Source: Utricularia gibba
Lineage: Eukaryota; Plantae; Magnoliophyta
DNA length: 64,000 nt
Direction: 5' to 3'
Assembly: GCA_002189035.1 (NCBI GenBank)
Contig: NEEC01000010.1
Span: 2,294,001 to 2,358,000, forward strand
Part shown: piece by piece, positions 3,000-55,913 of the stretch
Numbering within the stretch: the stretch's first letter is position 1
How the letters are laid out: every line of letters begins with the position of its first letter
Notes under the pieces: generated by a model
Databases searched by the model: none
Told to the model about the DNA's origin: nothing
Seen by the model: only the letters and a program-made list of their open reading frames with translations
Program-made: the position numbers and the translations under genes

Positions 3000-4864
3000 A
3001 TGTTTAATCAATATATTAGTGATGATGATCTTGATTTAGAATTTGATGTTCACATAAGCGAGTATGAGGGGCCAGATTCAGTTAATGAGGATGACATTTT
3101 ATGGGATAGTGACAAAGCCTCTGATTGTGATAATGAAATTGAGTGTGAAGCAGATATACTTACTGATCCATCACCTACCGTTGATTCTTTTGTGAAATCT
3201 ACTAGATGGATTATTTTGATGGGCGTGCTGGTAAACCTCACAAAAAGCATATTTCAAGAATAAAGAACAAATGAAAGAAGCTTTATCTTTTTATGTAGTC
3301 CATATCTTGAAGCATCCCTTTCTTGTCTACAAAAGTAGTAATTTGGAATATGAAGTTCGTTGTTGTCAAAAAAAGACTGATGTGAAATGCATGTGGAGAG
3401 TTAGAGTGATATACAAGGTTACACAATTTTGGACAATAAGCATGTATCTTCACATTTGCTTTACTAGAAATACACGATCACACTTCATTTTAGAAGTTAT
3501 TATTGACCAAATCAGAAAAGATCCTGTACCCTGTGGTTGATGTGACGTCGACGATAGAACGTCAATTTCATTTTGAAGTTACGTATAAGAAAGCTTTGCT
3601 TGCTATTAGACATGCAATAAAGAAGTTATATGGTATATGAGAAACTTCAGTTTTCCAATTACCATTATATCTAGCAGAGATCAAGAAAGCAAATCCAGGT
3701 AAAACATTTGTATGCATAATGTGTTTTTAATTCTATTTAAAAAAATTTATTTAGATGATTTGATACCTTTTGTTTTTAACTTATAGGTACTATTGTGAAA
3801 TATCAATATTACAATTGTGATGATGGTAATCACATGCTGCATTATGTATTTTTCACATTTGCACCTTGCAGAGCTGTTTTCGAACATTGTTGTCCTATTA
3901 TTAGTGTTGATGCTACACATTTGTATGCAAAATATCGACACAAGCTCCTTGTTGCTTGTACAAAAAATGGTGATAATGTTATAATTCCGTTGACATTTGC
4001 TATTGTTGAGGAGGAGTCCCATGACTCTTGGCTTTGGTTTTTTGAACATGTAGTTCGATATGTTATGATACAGATGCGTAAAACTTGTCTTATATCAGAT
4101 CGACATAGTGGCTTGTGTTCTGCAGTTAAATGTATTCCAGCATTTAATGAACTGGAGGGTGCTCATCGCTATTGTCTACAACATTTATGTTCGAACTTCC
4201 GAAGTAAGTATAGATCAAACTCCCTATGTGACTTGTTTTGGGCAGCAGCATTAGCATCACAGAAATCAAAGTTCAAGACCTTCATGAGTAAGATTAAAGA
4301 TCAAAATGAGGAAGCATATGAATATCTTGCTAGAATACCTCCAAAAAAGTGGACTTTTGCATATGATAAAGATTATAGGTGAAAAATGTGTATATGTTTG
4401 AATTTAAATTTATGAGATTGGTTTCTAACATTTGTCTTTTTTATATTCTTTAGATGCGGTGTACAAAGCACAGCATAGTTATGTAAGAGTCTATGAATAA
4501 TGTGTTGTGTGAAGCACGATGGCTTCCTATCAAAGCTCTAGTTGAAGCTATTTTTTAGCAATGCGTTTTGATTTTTATCCGAAATAGAAAGAAAGTGAAG
4601 TCATTAATCAAGAAAGGTCAGAATCTTTCTACTTACAGCATTGAGACCTATCGAAAATGGGATGAAAATTCAACTACTCATATGGTAAAGGAATATAATG
4701 AAGAAGAGCAGATAGCAGTTGTGATACCAAGAAGCAAATGTAAGCGAGATACTGCAACTTATACAATTTGTTTGAAAATGAAGACATGCACTTGTGGAAA
4801 ATGGATGCAATATTTGATTCCGTGTTTACATGCTATTCAGGTTCAATTTTTACTTCTAGTATAA
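3000..4864 (+). pseudogene. MuDR-family transposase, fragmented
   Basis: ORF pieces show a MuDR DBD-like segment (YEVRCC...CMWRV), the MULE catalytic domain (IISVDATHL, CLISDRHSGL, HRYCLQH) and a SWIM finger (CTCGKW...IPCLHAI). Stops/frameshifts around 4455-4500, where the third catalytic residue is expected. Confidence 0.85.
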
Positions 4865-6584: not shown

Positions 6585-9257
6585 TCAGTTGTTGCCACCA
6601 ACCTCCTCTTCAAGATCATAGATCTCCACCTTACTCCTTAACTTTGCCCATATTCGAGCAAAACTCCCCTCCCCCTTCTCGTCTTCTTCTTCTTCTCCGT
6701 CATGGTGTTCCCCTTCTTCATCATCATCATCCCCATCTTCCTCTTCACCCTTTAAGTTTGCCCACATTCGGGCAAAACTATCATCATTATCTTCCTCTTC
6801 TTCATCATCGTCGTCCCCGTCTTCCTCTTCATTCCCATCGTCGTCTTCCTCTTCTCCGTCATTGTAGTCTTCTTCTTCTTCTTCTTCATCTCCATCCTCT
6901 TCTTCTTCATCCTGGTCTTCCAAATCAATGGTTAGACGGAGTTGGTAATTTCCTGATCTCCGTTGCTGCTTCAGTATCCACTTCGCTCTCTCAACAACAT
7001 CGTTGTGACAATCAGTCAATTGAATTTCTGTCAAAGTGTCGATATTTTTCAAACCTCGTGGGATCTCATGCAAACCCCACACCTCAAGAATCTCTAGCTG
7101 GGGGAAGTGAATATCCGACCCCTTTCGCCAGTACTTGCACAGCTTAATGATTTCCAAAGATTTCAATCTGCGAAATCCACCTTCAATCGGCGTCCACCCA
7201 CGACCAAGATATTTACTACTGTAGCTGGACACCTCCAGTGCTTCAAGATTAGGCAATGCCCCAAATCCATTCACTTGGCTGCAACTGATTCGGCAATCAC
7301 GCAAACGCAGCACTTTCAGTGACTCCGGGAAACTAAGATGCTCAATATCCCGCGCATTAACCAACATTAGACTCTCTAATTGTGAGGGGAGTGCCACATT
7401 GTTTAAATCTCTTGAGCCGCCTAGAGATAGATGCTTCACATTCGGCATTGCATCAGCCATCTCTCTCGTACACTCATCAGATTTAAGTTCACGAAGGCGC
7501 TCAAAAACAGTGGAGAGTTTCCTTTCATTCACAGGAAAGCTATTGGTCCACAGCTCCAGTGATGAAAGCTGCGGCCAGCTCCATATTTCAGAAACAAGGA
7601 ACTCCATCCCCGTAGCTTGTGTATCATCGAATTTCTGCATGTTCCATAACGCAGAACCAAGTGAAGAAGCCTCCTCGCTCTTATCAGATTTACTACAGCT
7701 TCCACATAACTGGATATCACGCACAAGATAACATGATCCTTTCGAATTCAGGGTGCACTTGGTGCACCTACCCACCAGATCAGAAAACAGTTTTCTGGTG
7801 CTGATCTCTTTCAAGCAAAGATCCCGCAAAAGATCGTGTATCCCCAGATTGATTATTTGCCCAATCTCTTCCCAGGTTCGAATAAAAATTAAGTTTGTAT
7901 GAATAAGCTCGATCGTGTACTCCAATGCAGCCTCTTCGATTCGTCTGCCTTGTATTGGTCTCACAAGCGCAAAGGCAACCAGTGCATTAATCAAATCATC
8001 CAACAGAATGAAAACGTCTTCCTCATAGAATCCTCCGATGTACAGAAACAGGGGCTTGAGGCGAAGAGGCAAGTAGTCGTAACTCAAGCTCAGAGCCCTT
8101 CTGCTGTATTCATTGTCTTCCAAGTTAACCAAAGACGCCACATCTTTCGAAACGCTGCTCCAGTACTCACATGTCTTGTCCGACCTGGAGAGCAACCCAG
8201 CAATGGTGGTGATTGCAAGAGGGTGCCCTCTGCAATTTTCCACTATTTCCTTTCCATAGGCCTCGAGCTCAGTAGGGCAGCACATGCTGCCGAACACTCG
8301 ATCACAAAACAATTCCCAGCTTTTTTCTGGATCAAGAAAGTCGACATTGTAAGCCTTGGATGATCCTAAACCAGCAGCAAGTTGCCAGTCTCTTGTCGTC
8401 ACGATAACTCGACTTCCCTGGTTATCGTCGGGAAGATATTGTCTCAAAGCCTCCCATGCTTTCAGATCCCACATATCATCCAACACAATCAAATACCTGA
8501 AACCTTTTAAACTTTGATACAGATCGGTTCCCAAATCCCTAATGCTGTCACAACCTAAGCCTCCCAGAATACCTTGGAGTATTCGCAGCAAATCGTATTC
8601 TTGTGATACCGTAACCCAATAGCTCCGTTCAAATCGCCGTTGGATGAGGCGATCCTCGTAAACCAGCCGAGCTAAAGTTGTTTTTCCGATCCCTCCCATC
8701 CCAACGATGGGAATCACCTCACGGCTTTTTACGTGACTAGCAATCAGCTCATCCTTCATCCAAGAGAAGTGCCGTTCGAATCCGACCACTTTTGGCAGAC
8801 AATTTTTGGTAAATGAGGTTGAGCGATTTGATTTCAGAGATCGTTGGCTTACCGGGGTGGATTCCAAATTACACCCAGCAGTAGTTACCGTGCATCGGGC
8901 CGCCTCTAGATCTTGAATAACGTTTATCATATCCTCAGTGGAAGCCGCCGACGGCCATTTATCGCCTTCATCCGTAACATCCTCCGCTCTGGGAATTCGA
9001 TTCACCAAATGCCTGTCTAGAACCTCAGATGCCGCAATGACTAAATCACGAATGTCAAGGGCGATTTGCTCCATCCGCGGATCATCGGGTCCCGGCGGGA
9101 GACTTTCGAGAAATTCCACGAAATAAAGAGCCTGCCCTTCCAACTCCTCTATCCGCTCCGGATCTGCAGAAATAAGCTTGTACTTGTAGCGAAGCTTCAA
9201 GGTTTCCAGAAGCTGCAAGAGGGTGAGCAGGGAAATGTAGGCGGAAACAACAGCCAT
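6585..9257 (-). CDS. CC-NB-ARC-LRR resistance protein (R1A/R1B-like), 890 aa, single exon, acidic C-terminal tail
   Basis: P-loop GMGGIGKTT, kinase-2 YLIVLDDMW, RNBS-B GSRVIVTTR, GLPL variant GHPL, MHD variant IHD, degenerate LRRs. Confidence 0.93.
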   Translation of the reverse strand: MAVVSAYISLLTLLQLLETLKLRYKYKLISADPERIEELEGQALYFVEFLESLPPGPDDPRMEQIALDIRDLVIAASEVLDRHLVNRIPRAEDVTDEGDKWPSAASTEDMINVIQDLEAARCTVTTAGCNLESTPVSQRSLKSNRSTSFTKNCLPKVVGFERHFSWMKDELIASHVKSREVIPIVGMGGIGKTTLARLVYEDRLIQRRFERSYWVTVSQEYDLLRILQGILGGLGCDSIRDLGTDLYQSLKGFRYLIVLDDMWDLKAWEALRQYLPDDNQGSRVIVTTRDWQLAAGLGSSKAYNVDFLDPEKSWELFCDRVFGSMCCPTELEAYGKEIVENCRGHPLAITTIAGLLSRSDKTCEYWSSVSKDVASLVNLEDNEYSRRALSLSYDYLPLRLKPLFLYIGGFYEEDVFILLDDLINALVAFALVRPIQGRRIEEAALEYTIELIHTNLIFIRTWEEIGQIINLGIHDLLRDLCLKEISTRKLFSDLVGRCTKCTLNSKGSCYLVRDIQLCGSCSKSDKSEEASSLGSALWNMQKFDDTQATGMEFLVSEIWSWPQLSSLELWTNSFPVNERKLSTVFERLRELKSDECTREMADAMPNVKHLSLGGSRDLNNVALPSQLESLMLVNARDIEHLSFPESLKVLRLRDCRISCSQVNGFGALPNLEALEVSSYSSKYLGRGWTPIEGGFRRLKSLEIIKLCKYWRKGSDIHFPQLEILEVWGLHEIPRGLKNIDTLTEIQLTDCHNDVVERAKWILKQQRRSGNYQLRLTIDLEDQDEEEEDGDEEEEEEDYNDGEEEDDDGNEEEDGDDDDEEEEDNDDSFARMWANLKGEEEDGDDDDEEGEHHDGEEEEDEKGEGSFARIWAKLRSKVEIYDLEEEVGGNN

Positions 9258-15036: not shown

Positions 15037-18000
15037 CGAACAATGACCAGTCTTCCCTTTCTTGCTCTTCGTGGGGGTTCTGTTTATTCAACTGGTCTGC
15101 ATTTGAATCCGTGTTTTGGGCAGAGCAGAGACAGAAGTTGCGGGGGGAGAAGAAAAAACAAAGCATGGGAAAAAAGCAACGACGCATCGGAACAAATATA
15201 TACGGAGAACCGAGACAGAGATGGGCCCCATTCGCTTCTTCCCAAGTCTAACCCCACCCGGGTCGACCCGCATCCGCTTCCCGGTATGATTTGACTTGAA
15301 AACAGAACTTTTTTACTATTTTTTATTCTGAACACAAATGTGAAACAGTGGAATATTTAGGTTGTTGCCCACTGAATAAATGATTCACAATCACACACTC
15401 CTTACCCTCCCACAATTTGTCCCTTTTTATTTAATTTCTATATTTAAAAAAATAAGATTCCTATAAATAAATCAATTGTAGAAATTTAGGGGGATCCGTA
15501 CGTGAAAAGATAAATTTCCAAATATGACAGATACGTAATAAATCAGGAGAATTAGTTTCAATTTCCGAATAAGATAATTACCTTCTAAGTACGAGGGATG
15601 GAAGGGAAACCCAGTTGCTAAATATCTAAATAAATTTTTTTTTCCAGACCCAGAGAAAGGATGGCGAGTGGGTTGAATGTGACAAAGAGAGAAGAAAAAA
15701 GGGTGGATTCCCACTGAAGAAAAAATAATTAATATTTCGAATTTTGGTTCGAATTTCAAAACTCTATTATTGCACTTATCTGTCCCGCTCTACTTTTCTC
15801 TTTTACCCACCACCTAAAATCTTAAAAGACAAGCAATAAAGCGTTTTTTCTTTTTTTCCTCATTCAATTTATTATTATTATTTTTTTTGAAAAAAAAGGG
15901 GGGCGGATTCGATAAGATTGAAGGAAACTTCTCGACGGTTTCTTCTCGTGTCGCATTTCATGTGATGGGCACTGCCAAGTCAATTGCATGTATCGTGGGG
16001 TTGGTTCCTCGTGCTTCCAAAGTTGCTGATCCCGTGTAACGTTTTTATTTAATGCCCATTGACGTAGTGTCTATATTCTATAATTATAACACACACATGC
16101 TAATTTTATATTTAACCAATATAATGATCACATGGAACTCATGGGATAAGATAGTTTGATGATATAACACAGTTTGTGTTCAAAACGATTAAATCACATT
16201 ATGTATTATATGTTAAAATTAAGAATTGGATACGTCTGTACCAGCAAATACTAATTTAATATTTAAAATATTAAATTCAATCAATTATTATTAATCTATA
16301 ATTTATTATATATTTCAATTTAATTTCTAATATATAATATTATAAATTCAATTTTTATTTGTGTGCAACCTAAAACTGTTAAATCACATTATGAATACCA
16401 TAGATGGATATCGCAAATATCATTTTAATATTTTAATTTATAAAAGATTAAAATTCAATCAATTAATTATGATTTATAATTTATTGTATACTTGAATATT
16501 TTAATTTAATTTCTCCAAATGTAAGTGTCCAATTGTTATTTGTTTAAATTTAAAAACGGTTAAATGTTGATTTTTCTAAAACCGAAAGTAACTGAATTAC
16601 AAGAGCACATGCACATAAGGTAGCTAGACAGGGTTCCGCGGTCCAGTGCGGCGGTGGGGAGAGTAGGAAGGGGATGACCCACGCCAGCCAGCAGACAGAA
16701 GCATAAAGCGATGATAAGCAATCCATGGCGTCTTCTGATGTTGGTTTTCCAAAGGTAGGGAAGCAGCGTTTCCCTTTTCTCGTTTCGTGGGTTTCTTCGC
16801 CTTTTTTTCTCAGCTTTAACCCACTAAAGTTTCACGGAGTTATTGTGCTGCATATAACACATGCTTTTCTTTTCTTCTCTTCCTCCGGCCCCCGCCAGCG
16901 CCGAATCCACACCAGCGCAGCGCAATGAATGAACAGCAGCATCCCACAGGACTTTGCAGGGATCCACGAGCTGATAAAGCCGAAAGCGATTCATGGAGGA
17001 TGGAGGCGTTTTAGGGCCAAATGCGCATCCAGGAATATCTCATATCAGCCGCAGCGTGCGTGCGTGAGTGAATGAGTGAGAATGCATCCCTTTTTCGGGA
17101 GGCATCTTTCAAGATGGGAAATGGGAGTGGGAATGGAGGAGGAGATCAGTGGGGAGGGGGGGTGCCCATTTGAATATTTGGTCACACAAAGTAGAGAGAA
17201 TAACAAAAAGGCGTTATTCGAGAGAGACTCCTATGGATGATGGAGCAACCAACACTTGCACACTGCTTTCACCTGTAGCCTGCCTCTAGTGCGCTCCTAT
17301 GGATGGCGCACCCGGTACCATCAGATAGTGCTCGTTATCGATTAAAAAATAAAAGTAAAATAATCAAATATATAAGAATTATAAATTATTAATAATTATT
17401 TGAATTTAATTTTTTAATATAATTTATATTTATTATGTATTTAAATTTTAAATATATGATCTTGAATTTTGATACTTTTGATTCCAAATACTATTAAACT
17501 TCTCCATCACCATCCCATAAATTACTAATAATTGATTGAATTTAATCGTTTGTAATATGATTTATATTTATAAAACCCAATGTGGATCAAGAAAATGAGG
17601 TTTTAGGGTGGTTGTCAGAGATCTGTGTAAAGGAATGAGGTTGGGGGTACGTTGTGAAGTCAAATGATGTGTTCTTCAACATGGCGTGTTGAAAGTCGAC
17701 CAAAAACGACGTCGTCCCCTCCTATCAATTCAACACCTACGCTACTTGGCCTCTTCCTTCCCCTCCCCATATATATATTTTCTTTTTGTTTAATTGGGAA
17801 TATGGAATCATGTCTTTTCGAGTAGTAATCCTGTGAGTCCCGAGCAGTGGACCATGGCGCAATACTCATTCTCCGTTTGTGGGGGGCTAATAAATGAGAG
17901 AATTTATACATTCGCCCCTACTCTTTTTCTTTATTACATAACAATCGCACCGGACACTTGTGTGGATACTTTGAAAGTAGGACACGGCGGGGGTGTTTTT

Positions 18001-18630
18001 TCTCTAGTAATCAGTCAGTGGTTTGGAAGAATTATTGGGTACGAAAAGGTTGGTTTTTTTTCAGAGAAAGTCGAAAAAGGTAGGCTGGAAAACAGGGGAC
18101 TTCTCATGCAGATTGGCACATGAAGATCGGTCGGCAGAATGATGGGAGTGGGTCACGGTCAAGCCCCAGGCCCACCATTTGCTCAGACCAGGCCCACCAT
18201 AGCGTGGGCCGACTCACTCTGTGCAAATTTTTTCCCCGCCTCCAGACCGCTCAGCCCTCTGGACCGGGTCTCCCCACAGACTCTCCATGTGAGGCGTGAC
18301 GCAGACAGACCCGGCCTGGCCAGCACCAGCACCATTTTTTATTTTTTATTTTTTATTTTGAAGGACAATAATTTGATGGGCACTTCCAAATGTTATTCTT
18401 TCAAACAAAAAAATAAAGTTTTCAATTTTTTTGGTAGTGGAATCAACGTTCTCCCGTGGTGAATGAACTACGTGTTCTTCAGGCAAAGCGAATGAGGGAA
18501 ACGCCAAGCGCAACCGCGAATGTCAGAACTCATGAAGAAGAAACGCAAACGGCTAAACAAGCGGTGTAGAACAAATGGAGTCAGTAGTAGTTAAGGTGTT
18601 TGGAAGCATTCAGATTTGAACTCCCACAAT

Positions 18631-21600
18631 AAAAATTGGACAGGAGCAGCATTCATGAGTTCAGAATTGGACAGATGCAAGCATACAATTTCCCCCAGGC
18701 TCCTCACAGCTTATCCTCGTACTTGGACAGAGGTGTGAGAAGCGCAACCGCGAATGTGAGAACTCATGAGGAAGAAAAGAAAACGGACAAACAGGCTTAT
18801 CCGTAGTAGTAGTTCAGGTGTTTGGAAGCATTTAGACAGATTTGAACTCCCACAAAAAAGCTGCAAGTGTTGATCTATCCTCTCAGAGCTTATCCTCGTA
18901 CTCGGACAGCGGTGTCATCTGCTCCTTGAGGCCCTTGCGCTTCCGGATATCGGCGACCAGAGTGGCGGCCTGGGATCCGGATTCCAGTGGGTCGGACGAC
19001 ATCATGTCCCAGTGGTCGAACACGCACTGCGGGAACGCCTGTCCCGAAGTTGCGGCGCGCAGGGTGCTGGAGAAACCGAAGGACTCGATGACGGGGAGAT
19101 ACGCTTTGATGTTGTAGAGGGGAGTGCCCGGCCTCTGCATTTCCTCGAACACGTGGCCGCGCTTCTGGTTCAGCACACTGTAGATGCCACCCAGGGCCTG
19201 CTCCGGGGCCTGGATCTCAACCAGGTATACTGGCTCCAACAGGCGGGGCTTTGCGGTCAGATGAGAGGCGTAGACCACTCTTCTCGCCGTGGGAATGACT
19301 TGGCCGCCGCCCCTGTGAATGGCGTCGGCGTGGAGGACCACGTCGCACACTTCGAAGCAGATGCCCCTCATGTTCTCCTCCGCCAACGGCCCTTCCTTGG
19401 AAGCCCACTGGAAACCGGCGACCACCGAGTCCTTGATCTCATTCAGGTACTGAACTCCCTTGCACATGTCCACGACCATGTTGGGGCCGGTGGTCTCGGG
19501 GCCGAAGCACCATATCTTCTTGGCGAGCTCCTTGTCCCACCCGAACTCTTCCGACAAGATCTTGGAGCGAACCTTGGGATCATCCCTCGGGCCAATACGC
19601 CCGTCGTCAATGGCTTCTGCGAGTCCATCTTCCAGCGGTCTGGCTTCCATGTACAGACGGTTGTGCTTGTTGGGAGATTTGCTCATGACGGTGCGGCTGG
19701 ATCTCTCCAGCACCGTCTCACGGAAGGACACCACCGGATCAGATTTCACGATCTCGGCACCCCCCATGAAGTCCTCCTGCAGGTCCTTGAGGCAGATCTC
19801 AAGGTGAAGTTCTCCTGCACCAGCAATAATATGCTCACCCGACTCCTCGATGCTGCACACCACCATAGGATCAGACTTCGCCAAACGCTTCAGTCCCTCC
19901 ACAAGCTTCGGCAGATCAGACGCAACCTTGCACTGTACAGCAACACGCACGACGGGTGACACGGAGAACTTCATTGCTCGAATCGGGTGTGCATCCACTT
20001 CCTTCTCATTCGTAAGTGTGGCGTTCTTCGTGATGAACTGATCCAACCCAACCATGGCCACGGTGTTCCCACAGGGGACATCCTCCACGGTCTCTTGTCT
20101 CTTTCCCATCCAAATAACAGTTCGCTGCACACTCTTCACGTACAGGTCCTTCTTCTCTCCGGGCACATAATTCGGACCCATGATTCTCACCTTCAAACCT
20201 GTAGACACCTTTCCCGAGAACACACGTCCGAATGCATAGAACCTTCCCTTGTCAGAGGCCGGAATCATCTTCGAGACATAAAGCATGAGCGGCCCCTCGG
20301 GATCACAGTTTCTGATAGCATTCGCATACATATCATCGAGAGGTCCCTCGTACAGGTTCTCCACACGGTACTTCTGGGCCTTTGCAGGTGAGGGAAGATG
20401 GAATATCATCATTTCCAGTAGAGCGTTGCTGGCAGGAAGCCAGGTCTGCATCACCCGCTTCATCAACGCCTTTCCCATCAGTTCCTTTTCTTCTGATTTC
20501 ATCGTCACGCCGAGCTTCTGCAACATGGGCCACAGTTTCTCCTTCTGGTCATTCATGCACGTGGCAATTATCTGCTTGATAGGCTCGTAGCAGAACTGTA
20601 CAAAACCGCGCTTGCAGGTAGGAGACCCAGAATTCTTGGTAGTCCACTTCTTCGTGGCAGGATCAAAGAAATTCTCTCCCCACAGCCTCTCCATCATCTT
20701 CCCCTCATCCACACCAAATTTGGAAGCATACATCTTGGCGAAATTCGTCAAGGTAAACGCCCAGCCGTGCAGACCCGCAGAAAAAGCAACCGTACCCTTT
20801 TCGGGGTACACCATAACATCACCGAGGAGAGGATCTTCGTATGTGGCCATGATAACGTTGGCATTCTCGATGACCCTCTGAAATGTTTGGTAAGCTTCTT
20901 CTCCTTCAACCTGCAGCTCAAGGAAGCACCTGTCCATCTTGTTCACCGTCAACACGGGTCTGATTCTCTCTCCAAGAGCTTGTCGCAGGACAGTCTCCGT
21001 TTGAACACACACGCCCTCTACACAATCCACCACCACAAGAGCACCGTCGGTAATACGGAGAGCAGCCGTCACTTCGGACGAGAAGTCCACGTGTCCAGGG
21101 GAATCAATGAGATTGATGAGGTACTCGTTTCCTTGTCTCTCCCCCTTGTAGTTCTTGAGAGATTCATCAGACATCTCGTAGTACAAGGAGATGCCAGTAG
21201 ACTTAATAGTGATACCACGCTCAGCCTCGTCAGCTCGCGTATCCGTCATTCTCACATCACCAGCAACCTCCTGGGCAATGATACCCGCAGCAGCAACAAG
21301 GGAATCCGTCAGTGTTGACTTCCCTGGAAGAAGATGAAAATACAAAGCGATCAAGCACTGAACGGACATCCCATGGCACAGAATTAATGCCAAATAACTC
21401 TGATATTGTCATACGAAATATAACCACAATCAAACTGAGGCCTCATACCATGATCAACATGGGCGATAACCGACATGTTGCGTATGTTATGCTTCAGGTC
21501 CATAATTCTACGGAGCTCATCTGCTGTGAACTTCACCTGTAATCATCAAGTACAGTAGCACATTAGGGTCCCAAAAAATAAGCCTGCTAGTTTTTCTCAC

Positions 21601-21678
21601 TAATGATAAAAAAAGAAGAAAACTTTCGGCTTACCATCTTCGCAGATCAGATTCAGACGCTAGAGGCTGCTAGTATAA
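18631..21678. repeat. Left arm of a ~3.05 kb inverted repeat (partner 24977-28023)
   Basis: All mirrored ORF pairs have identical translations and coordinate sums of 46655. The only difference I saw is a 5G/4G run in the 3' flank. Confidence 0.95.
18883..21637 (-). CDS. EEF2: Translation elongation factor 2 (copy A), 843 aa
   Basis: Exons 21637-21635 (ATG), 21536-21449 and 21323-18883. [34 protein letters not shown], diphthamide loop [11 protein letters not shown]. Confidence 0.97.
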
Positions 21679-22123
21679 GAAGAATCTGCCACTGGTACAA
21701 ATAAAGATTGTAACTTCGTTCAGAGAAGGATATATAGCAAGTTCAAACAGAACAAGAAAAAACCATATCAAGCTGGAAACTCTAGAAAACTAAAAGAGCC
21801 GCCAAAGCGTAAGTGGCACAAATAATGCCATGAATTTGAAGAACACCCAAATTCTGATTCCTTTCTATGAACGAAAAACAACTGGATTAACCTTAAGAAG
21901 CATTATTATAATATAGCTCTAAAATCGATGACAATAGGGGAAAATGCGATCCATCAAATCATCCAAGTAGCGACGCAAACACATACGTTTAAACACGGTT
22001 AAAATATTCCATTGCCAAAAAAGAAGAATCCTGACACCGCAATCGTAAGGCATATGTATGCATACAGAGAAAACGGAAGAACGTGGCGACAACCTCCGGC
22101 GCACTCTGATGTGTGCCGCGGCA

Positions 22124-22132
22124 AAACCCTAA
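22124..22132 (-). promoter_or_regulatory. Telo-box (AAACCCTAA) in the eEF2-A promoter/5'UTR
   Basis: Exact motif next to a TATA-like element (22136-22141) and a CCAAT (22147). Telo-boxes are established in plant translation-machinery promoters. Confidence 0.6.
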
Positions 22133-22448
22133 GCCTTATAACAGGACCAATCACCGAAGTATAACTGAGAATATTCTCGAATATTTTCTTATTGTGATTA
22201 AATTAATCAATTATTGTAAAAACATTGTTAAATATTTTTCTTAAAAAGATGATCATCTTAAAATTACGTTGCAAATCATGATTTAATCATAATTTATTTA
22301 TTATATTTTAATCAAATTCGTTTTCTAAAGACGATTAGGGCCCCTAATTGAACGCACTGATTTGGGTGAAGTTGTCATATTTGTACATTGGCGCCGAATG
22401 TAACCGCCACCGGCAACCGGGCGGCGGTAGTTTCAGGGTGGGTCGTGT

Positions 22449-23837
22449 ATGGATCGATCCAAGGGGAACAGAAGCCATCCCCAAGGTTGTCTCCTTACCC
22501 AATTCCCAAATTCCTTTTTCATTCTACGCTTAATGCTGCCCAATCAAATTTTGTAGGTGAAATTGCTCGGATCCTCGTTGAGTTCCTGGAGGTTGCCGTG
22601 ACATCGGTAGTTTTTCTCAAAGGAGTGTACCCAAATGGTTTCAATTCGCCGTTTTTCTGCTTCCACTTTTTTTTTTTTTTCTAATTTCTGCTCTGTTCGG
22701 ATTATTGACTCCTCGAGGGAAAATCAATGGGTTGCAGGAGCTTTCGAGAGAAGGCGGTACATGAATGTTGTGGTTCATAAAGCCATACACCCTGAGTTAA
22801 GCGAGTATATTCATTCGGTTGTTCATGGGCTCCTACCGTTAATCACCAAGGTTGCGTTTTTTTGGGTTTCTGTCATCTAAAAATCTTGGATACGTCATTG
22901 AGAAGAAATTTTAACGTGTGGCTTTGTAAATATGAATGAAATTGAAGGTGAAGTGAAACGTGGTTTAACACTTGTTTTTTCATCAGGGGTTGGTGGATAG
23001 AGTAGGTGTGATATTCTTCAATGGTGAAAATGTTACCATGGAGCGATTCGTTTTCAAGATCAACGTGAATCAGTCATATAGTTCTAGGGTGGAACAAGAG
23101 AACCTGGAGTTCTCTCTGAGATCATTTTTGATCAAGCTGCCTTTCTCGCGGCTTTAACAAAAGCTCTTCCTCCGGTAAGCTTACATTACATGCCCTTCAC
23201 TTTTCTTATGCTGCTTCTTGAATACTTATAAATTTGCAGTCTTCTTGAAGTATGAAGTTGAATAGTTTACCGAGTGTTTCTTTTCACGGATGCTCATGGA
23301 TTTCTGTCCTTCTATGTGAGCATTCTGAGATAGCAAAACACCACCACCTAATACGAACCTTGTATTGGTGATATTATAGAAGGGGATGCCTCTTATGAGT
23401 CAAGTATTTTCAATCTCTATGTTCGCTTTCTGCTTTTCTGTCTCAATTCCTGAAAATTGCAAATGTTCCGAAATTGTGAATTTGCTTCATTTCAGTTGGA
23501 GTGGTTTTCTTGCCAGCATTAACTAGTCTTTCAACTCACCAAAGACTTCTTTTGGTGCGTGTGATTCATCATTCAAAAGGGCTTGTACTATGATAGACCA
23601 TAACAGGATACTTTTAATGAATCCATAAGAGTGTTGCTGTCACCAGGTTGCAGGTGGGAGATAATCGGCTACTTCCTACGGTTGCCTGATGCTAGCAGTG
23701 TAGGCAAGGATGATGCAGAGACGTGGATCCCAACCGATGCAAGGCAATGGCAGCAACCACCATTGATAACACCTATCAAGTCCATGTTCAGCGATCCGTT
23801 AAGCTTGCAGCTGTATGTAGAGCACCCAGCCTCTTAG
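22449..23837 (+). CDS. REV7: REV7 / MAD2L2 HORMA protein (DNA polymerase zeta subunit); two apparent 1-bp deletions at ~23150 and ~23174
   Basis: Exons 22449-22485, 22557-22637, 22738-22850, 22987-23174 and 23647-23837. EFLEVA...KGVYP, AFERRRYMNVVV, ERFVFKI, LRSFLIKL, CRWEI, WIPTD..QWQQPP, LQLYVEHP. Confidence 0.88.
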
Positions 23838-24976
23838 AACCACAGAGCTAGCAATGGATGGACAGCTTCTCCTTAAATTATATCATGAGTCATATTCCAC
23901 TCGAAATCTGCAGCAAGATCTGCAGAAAAATGCTCAGGGAAGCTGGAACCAGGCCAAATACTTGCTTCTAGCTACGGATGTTTTCCACTTGGTTGATAAC
24001 CTGTCTCGAGATGCAGTTGGCTTTCATGAATGGTTGTTTATGGTTCCCGATGATTCTTTGTAACGAAGGAAGAAGGGATTTACAAGTATTTAGTATTCAT
24101 ACTAAAAAAAATGTGAATAAAAGATAACATGGGAAATATAAGTATATAAAATTATTTAACGCCCCCTTCCTACGGTACGTTAATTTTATATCCAGCTTGC
24201 AGGAGTGTTCACCTCACACTGCTGCTGCGCTGCCACCAAGGTTGCCGCCGTTCTTCGACTCCCTCTGTTTCTTTGCGATTAGATTTTTACAGTCTGGGGG
24301 ATCGGGGTTAGTTTTTTCATGATGCGGATGCGCTGTAGGTTCTTTTCCCCTTTTTTATTTGGCTCTGATGCGTTGTAGTTAACTGCCGTAATAGTTTGAT
24401 GAGATATTAGAATTTCGCTCTTTGCTTGTATTCAGGTGTGCGGTAGGTACTTTTCACTTGTTCCTCGGATTTCTTGATGGATTCATCTCCCCCTGCTGTC
24501 ATTATTCTTTTTTTAAAAAAGTATTAATATTCAGGTTTTAGATGAAAAACAGGGTTTAAGATTGTGAATTGGAGTCGGTTTGTAGGTGTTGTCCCTAAGA
24601 TTTGAATCTGGGAGCATATTCCTTCAGTGGATTCAACGGAAAAGGGGCAAACTTGATTGTAATATTTATCCCATTTATATTTAACATGCTTCTTAAGGTT
24701 AATCCATCTGTTTTTCGTTCATAGAAAGGAATCAGAATTTGGGTGTTCTTCAAATTCATGGCATTATTTGTGCCACTGGACGCTTTGGCGGCTCTTTTAG
24801 TTTTCTAGAGTTTCAGTGTAGTTAAATCTATGCATTGGATTTGATACGATCTTCAAGGGGCTGTGAAGGATTCTCAAGATAATCTCTTTTGGTTCTAGGT
24901 GTTATAGAACATCATCACTTTCAAGACACTTATAGTCTTTATTGCTCATATGACAGGGTCTTCCGAGAACGGGCCT

Positions 24977-27900
24977 TTATACTAGCAGCCTCTAGCGTCT
25001 GAATCTGATCTGCGAAGATGGTAAGCCGAAAGTTTTCTTCTTTTTTTATCATTAGTGAGAAAAACTAGCAGGCTTATTTTTTGGGACCCTAATGTGCTAC
25101 TGTACTTGATGATTACAGGTGAAGTTCACAGCAGATGAGCTCCGTAGAATTATGGACCTGAAGCATAACATACGCAACATGTCGGTTATCGCCCATGTTG
25201 ATCATGGTATGAGGCCTCAGTTTGATTGTGGTTATATTTCGTATGACAATATCAGAGTTATTTGGCATTAATTCTGTGCCATGGGATGTCCGTTCAGTGC
25301 TTGATCGCTTTGTATTTTCATCTTCTTCCAGGGAAGTCAACACTGACGGATTCCCTTGTTGCTGCTGCGGGTATCATTGCCCAGGAGGTTGCTGGTGATG
25401 TGAGAATGACGGATACGCGAGCTGACGAGGCTGAGCGTGGTATCACTATTAAGTCTACTGGCATCTCCTTGTACTACGAGATGTCTGATGAATCTCTCAA
25501 GAACTACAAGGGGGAGAGACAAGGAAACGAGTACCTCATCAATCTCATTGATTCCCCTGGACACGTGGACTTCTCGTCCGAAGTGACGGCTGCTCTCCGT
25601 ATTACCGACGGTGCTCTTGTGGTGGTGGATTGTGTAGAGGGCGTGTGTGTTCAAACGGAGACTGTCCTGCGACAAGCTCTTGGAGAGAGAATCAGACCCG
25701 TGTTGACGGTGAACAAGATGGACAGGTGCTTCCTTGAGCTGCAGGTTGAAGGAGAAGAAGCTTACCAAACATTTCAGAGGGTCATCGAGAATGCCAACGT
25801 TATCATGGCCACATACGAAGATCCTCTCCTCGGTGATGTTATGGTGTACCCCGAAAAGGGTACGGTTGCTTTTTCTGCGGGTCTGCACGGCTGGGCGTTT
25901 ACCTTGACGAATTTCGCCAAGATGTATGCTTCCAAATTTGGTGTGGATGAGGGGAAGATGATGGAGAGGCTGTGGGGAGAGAATTTCTTTGATCCTGCCA
26001 CGAAGAAGTGGACTACCAAGAATTCTGGGTCTCCTACCTGCAAGCGCGGTTTTGTACAGTTCTGCTACGAGCCTATCAAGCAGATAATTGCCACGTGCAT
26101 GAATGACCAGAAGGAGAAACTGTGGCCCATGTTGCAGAAGCTCGGCGTGACGATGAAATCAGAAGAAAAGGAACTGATGGGAAAGGCGTTGATGAAGCGG
26201 GTGATGCAGACCTGGCTTCCTGCCAGCAACGCTCTACTGGAAATGATGATATTCCATCTTCCCTCACCTGCAAAGGCCCAGAAGTACCGTGTGGAGAACC
26301 TGTACGAGGGACCTCTCGATGATATGTATGCGAATGCTATCAGAAACTGTGATCCCGAGGGGCCGCTCATGCTTTATGTCTCGAAGATGATTCCGGCCTC
26401 TGACAAGGGAAGGTTCTATGCATTCGGACGTGTGTTCTCGGGAAAGGTGTCTACAGGTTTGAAGGTGAGAATCATGGGTCCGAATTATGTGCCCGGAGAG
26501 AAGAAGGACCTGTACGTGAAGAGTGTGCAGCGAACTGTTATTTGGATGGGAAAGAGACAAGAGACCGTGGAGGATGTCCCCTGTGGGAACACCGTGGCCA
26601 TGGTTGGGTTGGATCAGTTCATCACGAAGAACGCCACACTTACGAATGAGAAGGAAGTGGATGCACACCCGATTCGAGCAATGAAGTTCTCCGTGTCACC
26701 CGTCGTGCGTGTTGCTGTACAGTGCAAGGTTGCGTCTGATCTGCCGAAGCTTGTGGAGGGACTGAAGCGTTTGGCGAAGTCTGATCCTATGGTGGTGTGC
26801 AGCATCGAGGAGTCGGGTGAGCATATTATTGCTGGTGCAGGAGAACTTCACCTTGAGATCTGCCTCAAGGACCTGCAGGAGGACTTCATGGGGGGTGCCG
26901 AGATCGTGAAATCTGATCCGGTGGTGTCCTTCCGTGAGACGGTGCTGGAGAGATCCAGCCGCACCGTCATGAGCAAATCTCCCAACAAGCACAACCGTCT
27001 GTACATGGAAGCCAGACCGCTGGAAGATGGACTCGCAGAAGCCATTGACGACGGGCGTATTGGCCCGAGGGATGATCCCAAGGTTCGCTCCAAGATCTTG
27101 TCGGAAGAGTTCGGGTGGGACAAGGAGCTCGCCAAGAAGATATGGTGCTTCGGCCCCGAGACCACCGGCCCCAACATGGTCGTGGACATGTGCAAGGGAG
27201 TTCAGTACCTGAATGAGATCAAGGACTCGGTGGTCGCCGGTTTCCAGTGGGCTTCCAAGGAAGGGCCGTTGGCGGAGGAGAACATGAGGGGCATCTGCTT
27301 CGAAGTGTGCGACGTGGTCCTCCACGCCGACGCCATTCACAGGGGCGGCGGCCAAGTCATTCCCACGGCGAGAAGAGTGGTCTACGCCTCTCATCTGACC
27401 GCAAAGCCCCGCCTGTTGGAGCCAGTATACCTGGTTGAGATCCAGGCCCCGGAGCAGGCCCTGGGTGGCATCTACAGTGTGCTGAACCAGAAGCGCGGCC
27501 ACGTGTTCGAGGAAATGCAGAGGCCGGGCACTCCCCTCTACAACATCAAAGCGTATCTCCCCGTCATCGAGTCCTTCGGTTTCTCCAGCACCCTGCGCGC
27601 CGCAACTTCGGGACAGGCGTTCCCGCAGTGCGTGTTCGACCACTGGGACATGATGTCGTCCGACCCACTGGAATCCGGATCCCAGGCCGCCACTCTGGTC
27701 GCCGATATCCGGAAGCGCAAGGGCCTCAAGGAGCAGATGACACCGCTGTCCGAGTACGAGGATAAGCTCTGAGAGGATAGATCAACACTTGCAGCTTTTT
27801 TGTGGGAGTTCAAATCTGTCTAAATGCTTCCAAACACCTGAACTACTACTACGGATAAGCCTGTTTGTCCGTTTTCTTTTCTTCCTCATGAGTTCTCACA

Positions 27901-28023
27901 TTCGCGGTTGCGCTTCTCACACCTCTGTCCAAGTACGAGGATAAGCTGTGAGGAGCCTGGGGAAATTGTATGCTTGCATCTGTCCAATTCTGAACTCATG
28001 AATGCTGCTCCTGTCCAATTTTT
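24977..28023. repeat. Right arm of the eEF2 inverted repeat, ending in a T15 run (28019-28033)
   Basis: Reverse complement of 18631-21678. Confidence 0.95.
25018..27772 (+). CDS. EEF2: Translation elongation factor 2 (copy B), 843 aa, identical protein to copy A
   Basis: Exons 25018-25020, 25119-25206 and 25332-27772 total 2532 nt, i.e. 843 codons plus stop. Confidence 0.97.
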
Positions 28024-28854
28024 TTTTTTTTTTGACGTACTCTATTTGGAGGCTACGCTGTACGCACTATATATTCGCACTTATACTCTATATTTATGTA
28101 ACTGCAAACTGTACGGTATCAAATTTTACTGGTTAAAAACTTTAGAAGTAAATACAATATGTTACATAAGTTAGATGACGGAACAAACAATCAGATTTAA
28201 TTTAAAATGAAACTAAATTTTATAATACGTTGTTCCACGTTTAATCAAATTATAGGAAATAATGCATATCCATGAAGTATTTCCTAAGCCCTCTCTGATC
28301 ATTTCATGATGCGCCGCCTGCTCTACATTTGTTGGAGTATCTGCAAAAAGCATGGTAGATCTACTTCTGCTCACGCTTCTTCCCACCGTGAAATGAGCAT
28401 CCGAAGTTGAACTTGAAGCGTTTGTCAACCCCTTCATCGTCGAACTTACAGTAATCTTACAACGTTGTCGGCTTCAAAAAAAAAAAAAATGGTATCTTGA
28501 AAAACATAAAACTATTTTTTTTCCCACATTTGCCAACTTAACCTTTGCCTAAAACGCTCGTGTTAGATTAACTTCACATATGCAGCACAGAACGCAGGTT
28601 AGTTAAATATTATGGCTTCAGTTTCATAAAGTTTGCATGCTACGGGTTTGAACTTTTCTGGTTTATTAATGACGCGAAACAATTGGCTAATTGCAGTTAC
28701 TCCAAGTGCATTTTGGAGTCATTTTGCATGTACTCTTAAAGTACATTCGAGTTACTTTGTCTACTCGTAGTGTGTCTCTTTTTCCTCCTCATGCTCTCAG
28801 TCCCTCTATATATATGTCGTGTGTGTGTGCTACAGTCATCACCTCCCTTTTCCG

Positions 28855-55103: not shown

Positions 55104-55913
55104 ATTGCGTATTTTATTTTTTATAATATTTAACGTTTTCACAATATCGAGTTTTCTCCTACATTTAGTGGGACCTGTAATATTTTTTTATTGTAAATTT
55201 GATTTTTTTATTTTAATTTATCAAATATTAAAAAAATATCAAATATTAAAGAAAACTACAATTGTAAATACTTATCATTTTAAAAATAGAAATCATTATC
55301 TTTTGTAATAATACTAATTTCAAAATGATTTTTTAGAGTACATGGCAGATACTTTTTCAACATGGGTGGGTCCCACACATTTTTGAATTTTGTGTGCAGA
55401 TTTCCATCGTTATTGCTGTAAGTGTTTTGAAGAATATTGATTGTGGAGGAGATCTTTTGTTGTTGAGCTCAACGTTGAGAGAATTTGTAAGAATTGAAAG
55501 TTGTTGCGAACCAAAAAACAACATGTTTCTTGCTGTATTAGAGAGAATTTATAGACAAAGTGGATGTCGCCCGTTGGTTCTTGTCAGGGTTAGAAATCGA
55601 CCGTTGACTTCTTCTCGTAGAGTAGTATCTTTTTGTGTGGTTTGTACGGCATACCCTGTATCCTGAACCGCTTTCGTGGACCAGGGTCTTGGGCAGAGTC
55701 TTGGCCCATCAGGCTTGAGTATTCGGGCCCAAGCGGAACGAGACATCTTTCAGGGCTGGAATCAGATTCGCTCCCCTCAGTGTGCTTCGGGACTGCGCTG
55801 CGTCCTTCGGAGCTCTTGTTTTCACAGTTCTTCAGGACTTCATCATTCACCATCAATTGCCTCCCTCTCTGTGGTGGTGGGAGTGGTTTCCCTCATCCTC
55901 GTCCCGCTCTGCG

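What the first reader, a model, noticed from the sequence alone, without database searches (positions are those of the whole stretch)
18631..28023. Two full eEF2 genes form a near-perfect 3.05 kb head-to-head palindrome
Arms 18631-21678 and 24977-28023 include the ATG, both introns, the CDS and ~250 bp of 3'UTR. Every mirrored alternative-frame ORF is identical and coordinates sum to 46655, indicating no indels and apparently no substitutions, even in introns and synonymous sites. Identity stops abruptly 41 bp upstream of the ATG. Together with the diverged homology in the spacer, this suggests ongoing arm-to-arm gene conversion keeping a dosage-sensitive housekeeping pair identical, analogous to Y-chromosome palindromes (inference).
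Basis: partly seen in the sequence, partly recalled or inferred. Interest (0 to 1): 0.75.

Follow-up and report, generated by a model that had tools for sequence, protein, structure and literature searches.

The report
Identical mirrored eEF2 genes flanking REV7
A plant chromosome carries two mirror-image, letter-identical copies of the essential translation gene eEF2 on either side of a DNA-repair gene; one copy was most likely recently overwritten from the other, which is a well-known process.

Summary
The arms are 18631-21678 (gene on the minus strand) and 24977-28023 (plus strand), 3,048 and 3,047 bp. They have no substitutions and differ by one base in a 3'UTR G-run (G5 vs G4).

Each arm holds a complete eEF2 gene: ATG, two introns, 843 codons, 96% identical to Mangifera eEF2. 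Each also carries 42 bp of leader and 251 bp after the stop codon.

It carries a REV7/MAD2B gene on the plus strand, so the two eEF2 copies do not share a promoter.

A mirrored 141-bp block lies 97 and 162 bp beyond the inner arm ends. It shows 4 substitutions and 3 gap columns (K about 0.03), against none in 906 unconstrained arm sites (Fisher p = 3e-4). [quoted passage not shown] "Ongoing" conversion, dosage selection and the Y-palindrome analogy are not shown. No reads or orthologous loci could be consulted.

The scan has already noted several similar gene palindromes elsewhere in this genome, which is Lamiales and probably the bladderwort family. This is an ordinary kind of event: a new member of a known kind.

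The parts
18631..21678 (-). Left arm: complete eEF2 gene (ATG 21634-21636; main exon CDS down to stop at 18883-18885) plus 42 bp of leader and about 252 bp after the stop
   Evidence: identity to the right arm; tblastn 100% over 812 aa; Pfam GTP_EFTU, EFG_III, EFG_IV, EFG_C
24977..28023 (+). Right arm: complete eEF2 gene. ATG 25019-25021, intron 25022-25118, exon 2 25119-25206, intron 25207-25331, exon 3 25332-27772 (stop 27770-27772), 3' region to 28023
   Evidence: sequence and translation; exons align to residues 2-30 and 32-843 of a plant eEF2, 93% and 96%
18692..18696 (-). The only arm-to-arm difference: G5 run in the left arm against G4 at 27959-27962 in the right arm (gene-strand reading), in the 3'UTR
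21679..24976 (.). Spacer of 3,298 bp. It is not palindromic apart from the 141-bp block and holds both eEF2 promoters and the REV7 gene
21776..21915 (-). Left copy of the mirrored 141-bp promoter block, 97 bp beyond the inner end of the arm
   Evidence: 134 matches, 4 mismatches, 3 gap columns against 24676-24814
24676..24814 (+). Right copy of the mirrored 141-bp promoter block, 162 bp beyond the inner end of the arm
22449..23837 (+). REV7/MAD2B (HORMA) gene in the spacer. Proposed ATG 22449, exon 1 to 22487, intron to 22557, last coding exon ending about 23837. The middle exons were not verified
   Evidence: exon pieces match MAD2B residues 3-41 (E = 0.0026), 33-77 (E = 3e-5) and 165-201 (E = 0.02).
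18506..18633 (-). Relic second copy (A') of the first part of the eEF2 3'UTR, 78% like 18740-18859. It continues outside the left arm and is absent beyond the right arm
27919..27952 (+). Relic copy (B') of the last 34 nt of the CDS including the stop, 91% like 27740-27773. It lies inside both arms (mirror at 18703-18736)
28020..28033 (+). T14 run at the outer breakpoint of the right arm. The left arm reads T5 and then continues into A'

Best explanation
This is a real, small gene-bearing palindrome in a nuclear genome of the Lamiales, probably the bladderwort family. Two intact, divergently oriented eEF2 transcription units sit in 3.05-kb arms around a 3.3-kb spacer, which carries a REV7/MAD2B gene and both eEF2 promoters. 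The inverted duplication is older than the arms look. Its promoter part has diverged: a 141-bp block shows about 3% substitutions plus indels, and a 97/162-bp stretch has become unalignable. More recently, at least one intrachromosomal arm-to-arm gene conversion overwrote one copy from the other. In that process a break in one arm is repaired from the other arm, which lies 3.3 kb away in inverted orientation. The tract fills the whole stretch of contiguous homology. It runs from the outer edge of the duplication (18631/28023) inward to the promoter heterology (21678/24977), which stopped it and left the short 141-bp block to drift. The left copy is probably the parent, because its diverged 3'UTR tandem relic continues past the arm end while the right copy is cut at a T-run. 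The net effect is two identical eEF2 coding units driven by different promoters. The left one shares an 812-bp divergent region with REV7, and the right one lies 1.14 kb downstream of the REV7 stop. What is shown: the anatomy, the identity, the intact genes and the heterogeneity of divergence. What is inferred: conversion as the cause, the polarity of the copies, and expression of both.
For: Arm identity is 3,047 of 3,047 alignable bases with one G-run indel. Introns (97 + 125 bp), the 3' region (251 bp), the leader (42 bp) and 391 four-fold sites are all identical, so purifying selection on the protein cannot explain the identity. The mirrored, collinear 141-bp block has E = 1e-55, 4 substitutions and 3 gap columns, K = 0.030. 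Compared with 0 of 906 unconstrained arm sites, Fisher p = 2.9e-4. The 95% upper bound on arm divergence is 0.33%, at least 9-fold lower than the block. Both ends of the identical tract coincide with the ends of contiguous homology. The flanks are unique on both sides for at least 18 kb and 36 kb, with no DNA or protein similarity between left and right flanks. A unique gene-bearing spacer is unlike a fold-back assembly artefact. The 3'UTR relic A' continues beyond the left arm only. Both copies are intact eEF2 genes. Notes from this scan report other palindromes in the same genome with identical cores and diverged edges; these are leads, not evidence.
Against: The case for an older duplication rests on a single 141-bp block. 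The neighbouring sequences are not significantly alignable (p = 0.12 and 0.015). The block could be held similar by function while the duplication is much older, or it could be an earlier conversion tract, so the age is uncertain. Polishing with cross-mapped reads could have erased a small number of true arm differences. One conversion event is enough to explain the data; nothing shows repetition or selection.
Confidence: 0.62

Rival explanations
1. This is a very young, one-step inverted duplication of the 3.05-kb eEF2 unit with no gene conversion. The 141-bp block would be an unrelated pre-existing inverted repeat pair, such as a small dispersed element that may have primed the rearrangement.
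For: Zero substitutions in 3,047 bp is what a duplication younger than roughly 10^5 generations would give (the mutation rate is assumed from Arabidopsis, from my own knowledge). The outer breakpoint sits in a T-run, a plausible microhomology site. Another follow-up in this genome proposed a repeat-primed young palindrome (unchecked).
Against: The block is collinear and mirrored with respect to the arms, at similar distances (97 vs 162 bp). It occurs only twice in the 64-kb window. A repeat-primed fold-back would place the new copy directly against the repeat, not after 97/162 bp of unrelated sequence.
Confidence: 0.17
2. The structure is real but the perfect identity is partly an assembly product. 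Reads shorter than the arms were mapped to both arms during consensus calling, which averaged out a modest number of true differences.
For: No read data could be examined. Other notes on this genome report systematic 1-nt deficits at G/C runs, typical of lightly polished long-read assemblies (unchecked). The only arm difference here is exactly such a G-run length change.
Against: Cross-mapping can hide differences only when the arms are already nearly identical. At the block's divergence, about 90 substitutions would be expected in 3 kb and reads would then map uniquely. The G-run difference suggests the arms were called at least partly independently.
Confidence: 0.13
3. The second copy does not exist. 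It would be a fold-back or chimeric mis-assembly.
For: None beyond the general fact that palindromes can arise from chimeric long reads.
Against: Artefactual fold-backs lack a unique 3.3-kb gene-bearing spacer. They usually sit at contig ends and would not carry a separately diverged mirrored block. Here the flanks are unique for at least 18 kb on the left and 36 kb on the right, and the right arm ends 830 bp before an expansin gene.
Confidence: 0.04
4. The duplicate pair is ancient and kept identical by purifying selection alone.
For: eEF2 protein is extremely conserved (96% identity to Mangifera).
Against: Introns, UTRs and all 391 four-fold degenerate sites are also identical.
Confidence: 0.01

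Closest known systems
Sex-chromosome palindromes with arm-to-arm gene conversion: human Y P1-P8 (PMC8600007), primate X palindromes (PMC8327919, PMC8981503), willow W palindromes (PMC7023750)
   Same: Inverted arms of over 99.9% identity around a unique spacer. Intact genes lie in the arms. The identity is attributed to intrachromosomal gene conversion, and the arm boundaries are sharp.
   Different: The arms here are 3 kb rather than about 9 kb to 1.45 Mb. The gene is a housekeeping gene, not a reproduction-biased family. There is no evidence of a non-recombining region, and the locus is an ordinary gene-dense stretch with NLR, LHC, expansin and receptor-kinase genes. Conservation of the palindrome between species, which is what demonstrates maintenance in those systems, is untested here.
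Ectopic (non-allelic) gene conversion between nearby duplicated plant genes, i.e. concerted evolution of tandem or proximal duplicates (discussed in PMC6383267)
   Same: A short physical distance (3.3 kb) between the paralogs. A tract of complete identity is embedded in older, diverged homology.
   Different: The tract here covers the entire gene including both introns and ends at the limits of homology, rather than forming a short patch inside diverged paralogs.
Other gene palindromes noted by this scan in the same genome: RNR1, cell-wall invertase, GDSL lipase, patatin (AI notes, unchecked)
   Same: The same pattern of letter-identical inverted arms with diverged mirrored edges, and the same conclusion of recent overwriting.
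   Different: A different gene. Here a third, unrelated gene (REV7) sits in the spacer, and the tract matches almost exactly one transcription unit.
Yeast EFT1/EFT2 and other highly expressed translation-gene duplicates kept alike by gene conversion (from my own knowledge; a literature search gave no direct source)
   Same: Two eEF2 genes encode identical protein and are thought to be homogenised by conversion.
   Different: The yeast pair is dispersed on different chromosomes, derives from whole-genome duplication, and is alike mainly in the coding sequence. Here the copies are adjacent, inverted, and identical in introns and UTRs too.

Membership tests
Gene-bearing palindrome homogenised by arm-to-arm gene conversion | Two inverted arms of at least 99% identity separated by a unique spacer | tested here: met
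   arms of 3,048 and 3,047 bp with one indel; spacer of 3,298 bp
Gene-bearing palindrome homogenised by arm-to-arm gene conversion | Intact genes in both arms | tested here: met
   full-length eEF2, 843 codons, all domains, both copies
Gene-bearing palindrome homogenised by arm-to-arm gene conversion | Arm identity exceeds what the age of the duplication predicts | tested here: inconclusive
   Surrogate test only: the mirrored 141-bp block has K = 0.03 against 0 of 906 unconstrained arm sites, p = 3e-4. This rests on a single block, and neighbouring sequence is not alignable
Gene-bearing palindrome homogenised by arm-to-arm gene conversion | An orthologous palindrome in related species, with arms grouping by species (concerted evolution) | not testable with these tools
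Sex-chromosome-type large palindromes (Y, X, W) | Arms of many kilobases (about 8 kb or more) in a non-recombining or sex-linked region, with reproduction-biased gene families | tested here: not met
   The arms are 3 kb. The gene is housekeeping eEF2. The neighbours are ordinary autosomal-type genes. Sex linkage itself cannot be tested
Eukaryotic elongation factor 2 (eEF2) | GTP_EFTU, domain 2, EFG_III, EFG_IV and EFG_C architecture with high identity to plant eEF2 | tested here: met
   all domains above Pfam cut-offs; 96% over 812 aa with no gaps
Eukaryotic elongation factor 2 (eEF2) | Diphthamide-acceptor histidine in the conserved HRGGGQ loop of domain IV | tested here: met
   ...[13 protein letters not shown]... 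is present and aligned to the plant homologue
REV7/MAD2B (HORMA) for the spacer gene | Sequence similarity across the HORMA domain from N- to C-terminus | tested here: inconclusive
   Exon pieces match MAD2B residues 3-41, 33-77 and 165-201. The middle exons gave no hit, and Pfam HORMA was not reached by single exons

The most novel reading that the evidence does not exclude
The identical tract matches almost exactly one transcription unit, from 42 bp before the ATG to about 250 bp after the stop, in one of the most highly transcribed genes of a cell. The same genome seems to hold many gene palindromes with letter-identical cores. This could reflect an unusually high, transcription-associated rate of break-induced ectopic conversion across this bladderwort-family genome. 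Inverted gene pairs would then be continually homogenised, and this might be linked to the lineage's proposed high recombination and deletion bias.
Probability: 0.08. Interest if true: 0.6.

Novelty: new member of a known kind. Interest (0 to 1): 0.3.

Why it matters
The locus is a clean, compact plant example of an essential housekeeping gene duplicated in mirror image and then copy-corrected. It has a built-in internal clock: the escaped 141-bp block shows that the identity is secondary. It gives two identical eEF2 coding units under different promoters, which matters for annotation, for knock-out design (both copies must be hit) and for read mapping. On its own it adds no new principle. Its wider value lies in a genome-wide census of such palindromes in this small, fast-evolving genome.

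Tried and rejected
1. Further diverged homology. Sensitive local and global alignments of the rest of the spacer and of the outer flanks, with shuffles, found only the 141-bp block to be solid. The 97/162-bp stretch (p = 0.12) and the region beyond the block (p = 0.015) are not convincing. The outer flanks share only AT-rich low-complexity matches.

2. Larger ancient segmental duplication. Left-flank ORFs against the right flank by tblastn gave no hits.

3. Block as a structured RNA or snoRNA. Rfam found nothing at gathering or E-value thresholds. Folding z-scores ran from -0.3 to -1.3. This idea is rejected.

4. Transposon capture (Pack-MULE or Helitron) or retrocopy. No terminal inverted repeats bracket either copy, introns are retained, and the sense strand ends in poly-T rather than poly-A. 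The T14...A14 pair at 28020/28476 does not restore homology beyond it. This idea is rejected.

5. Independent DNA of the same or a related species.

6. Telo-box promoter motifs. There is one at 22124 in the eEF2-L/REV7 divergent region and none in the right promoter. Six occur in the window against 2.2 expected, which is not significant.

7. Literature. No paper describing an eEF2 palindrome in plants was found.

8. The spliced eEF2 and REV7 proteins were never joined.

Full report
**Observation**

An inverted-repeat scan, a base-by-base mirror comparison and blastn all find the repeat.
- Exact alignment of 18631-21678 (reverse complement) with 24977-28023 gives 3,048 vs 3,047 bp.
- There are no substitutions. 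The single difference is a G5 vs G4 run in the 3'UTR (sequence).
- Identity begins 42 bp upstream of the ATG, not 41.

**Gene content of the arms**

The right arm reads as follows:
- ATG 25019-25021
- intron 25022-25118
- exon 2 25119-25206
- intron 25207-25331
- exon 3 25332-27772

Searched exon by exon by reference, exon 2 aligns to residues 2-30 and exon 3 to residues 32-843 of a plant eEF2. Identity is 93% and 96%, with no gaps. The split codon accounts for residue 31. All EF2 Pfam domains score above their cut-offs in both copies, and the HRGGGQ diphthamide loop is present. Both genes point away from each other, with their 5' ends facing the spacer.

**Organism**

eEF2 is too conserved to place the genome. 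A single-exon NLR in the window (6588-9257) has its best 120 relatives almost all in Lamiales, at only 30-38% identity. This points to a Lamiales lineage without close relatives in the database. Other agents' notes on this genome call it bladderwort-family, and I treat that as probable, not shown. The neighbourhood is ordinary and gene-dense: NLR, chlorophyll a/b-binding protein, expansin, malectin-type kinase, a second NLR and a MULE transposase fragment.

**The spacer**

The spacer (21679-24976) is not merely two promoters. Its ORF pieces match human REV7/MAD2B:
- residues 3-41 (E = 0.0026)
- residues 33-77 (E = 3e-5)
- residues 165-201 (E = 0.02)

Reading the DNA gives a plausible start at 22449 (exon 1 to 22487, a 70-nt intron) and a stop near 23837. 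The middle exons gave no database hit.

The layout is therefore eEF2-L (minus strand), 812 bp, REV7 (plus strand), about 1.14 kb, eEF2-R (plus strand). The left copy shares a divergent promoter region with REV7, which holds one telo-box at 22124. The right copy lies downstream of REV7.

**Diverged homology**

The only solid extra homology is a mirrored, collinear block, 21776-21915 vs 24676-24814.
- It has 134 matches, 4 mismatches and 3 gap columns, with blastn E = 1e-55.
- It lies 97 bp (left) and 162 bp (right) beyond the inner arm ends.
- The intervening stretch is not significantly alignable (global alignment against 1,000 shuffles, p = 0.12).
- Sequence beyond the block is marginal (p = 0.015).
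- The block shows no sign of being a structured RNA.
- It occurs only twice in the window.

**Heterogeneity of divergence**

The arms contain 906 sites that should be free to change:

| Site class | Count |
|---|---|
| Leader | 42 bp |
| Introns | 222 bp |
| 3' region | 251 bp |
| Four-fold degenerate sites | 391 |

None of these differs. The block has 4 substitutions in 138 compared bases (K = 0.030), giving Fisher p = 2.9e-4. The 95% upper bound on arm divergence is 0.33%, at least nine-fold below the block. Purifying selection cannot explain identical introns and synonymous sites. A single young duplication cannot explain the diverged, collinear block.

The simplest reading is an older inverted duplication followed by recent homogenisation of the arms by intrachromosomal gene conversion. 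Both ends of the identical tract coincide with the ends of contiguous homology: the outer duplication edge and the promoter heterology. That is what a homology-dependent tract would produce.

With an Arabidopsis-like mutation rate (7e-9 per site per generation, from my own knowledge), the arms were last identical within roughly 10^5 generations. The block last matched about 2 million generations ago. These numbers are rough, and constraint or an intermediate conversion of the block would change them.

**Polarity**

The eEF2 3' end carries a diverged tandem relic.
- The last 34 nt of the CDS (B) and the first part of the UTR (A) recur as B' (91%) and A' (78%).
- B' lies inside both arms.
- A' continues past the end of the left arm (18506-18633).
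- On the right, A' is replaced after a T-run by unrelated AT-rich sequence, and homology does not resume before the expansin gene.

The left copy therefore sits in its native 3' context and is probably the parent. A later deletion on the right is the alternative.

**Artefact check**

- A fold-back mis-assembly would lack a unique gene-bearing spacer, a separately diverged mirrored block, and long unique flanks on both sides. I give it about 4%.
- Cross-mapped polishing could have erased a few true differences. It could not turn block-level divergence (about 90 expected substitutions) into none.
- The single difference is a G-run length change. Other notes on this assembly report systematic one-base deficits at G/C runs (unchecked), so the arms may in truth be perfectly identical.

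**Comparison with what is known**

The structure works like the arm-to-arm conversion described for palindromes on the human Y (PMC8600007), primate X (PMC8327919, PMC8981503) and willow W (PMC7023750). It is not a member of that class: the arms are 3 kb, the gene is housekeeping, and nothing suggests a non-recombining region. It fits better with ordinary non-allelic conversion between closely spaced plant paralogues (discussed in PMC6383267). The scan has already noted several palindromes of the same pattern in this genome, including RNR1, invertase, GDSL and patatin. Those notes agree with my reading but are not independent evidence. I found no paper describing an eEF2 palindrome in plants.

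**Verdict**

- The gene-conversion reading is supported for at least one recent event.
- 'Ongoing' maintenance and dosage selection remain inference.
- The finding is a new member of a known kind, of modest interest.

Noticed in passing
window 22449-23837 (+): A REV7/MAD2B (HORMA, DNA polymerase zeta / shieldin subunit) gene sits in the palindrome's spacer. Its ATG is 812 bp from the ATG of the left eEF2 copy, in divergent orientation. The N- and C-terminal exons are supported by PDB matches; the middle exons were not verified.
   Followed up: partly
window 18506-18915 and 27740-28023: The eEF2 3' end carries a diverged tandem relic of its own last 34 coding bases plus the first part of the UTR (B-A-B'-A', 78-91% alike). 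This is a trace of an older partial tandem duplication or of a lost third copy.
   Followed up: partly
window 18692-18696 vs 27959-27962: The only arm difference is a G5/G4 run. Other notes on this assembly report systematic one-base deficits at G/C runs, so this may be a consensus error rather than a real variant.
   Followed up: no
window 21731-21737 vs 24900-24915: The left eEF2 promoter has a canonical CTATATAT box about 100 bp upstream of the ATG. The roughly equivalent position in the right promoter reads GTTATAGAA. The two identical genes may therefore use different start sites or differ in strength.
   Followed up: no
window 6585-9257 (-) and 55782-58508 (+): Two single-exon CC-NLR genes (890 and 908 codons). 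The first has its best relatives in Lamiales at only 30-38% identity, suggesting a fast-evolving or poorly sampled lineage.
   Followed up: partly
window 3795-4382 (+): An ORF with a MULE transposase domain (Pfam E = 7e-16) in an AT-rich stretch (GC about 0.30), probably a Mutator-like element remnant.
   Followed up: no
window 16246-16565 and 17341-17571: A cluster of short direct and inverted repeats (72-87% alike) in the AT-rich left flank, possibly MITE-like debris.
   Followed up: no
window 28020-28035 and 28474-28489: A T14 run at the right arm's outer edge and a complementary A14 run lie 438 bp apart and bracket an AT-rich segment. Homology to the left flank does not resume after it, so an insertion could not be shown.
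   Followed up: yes
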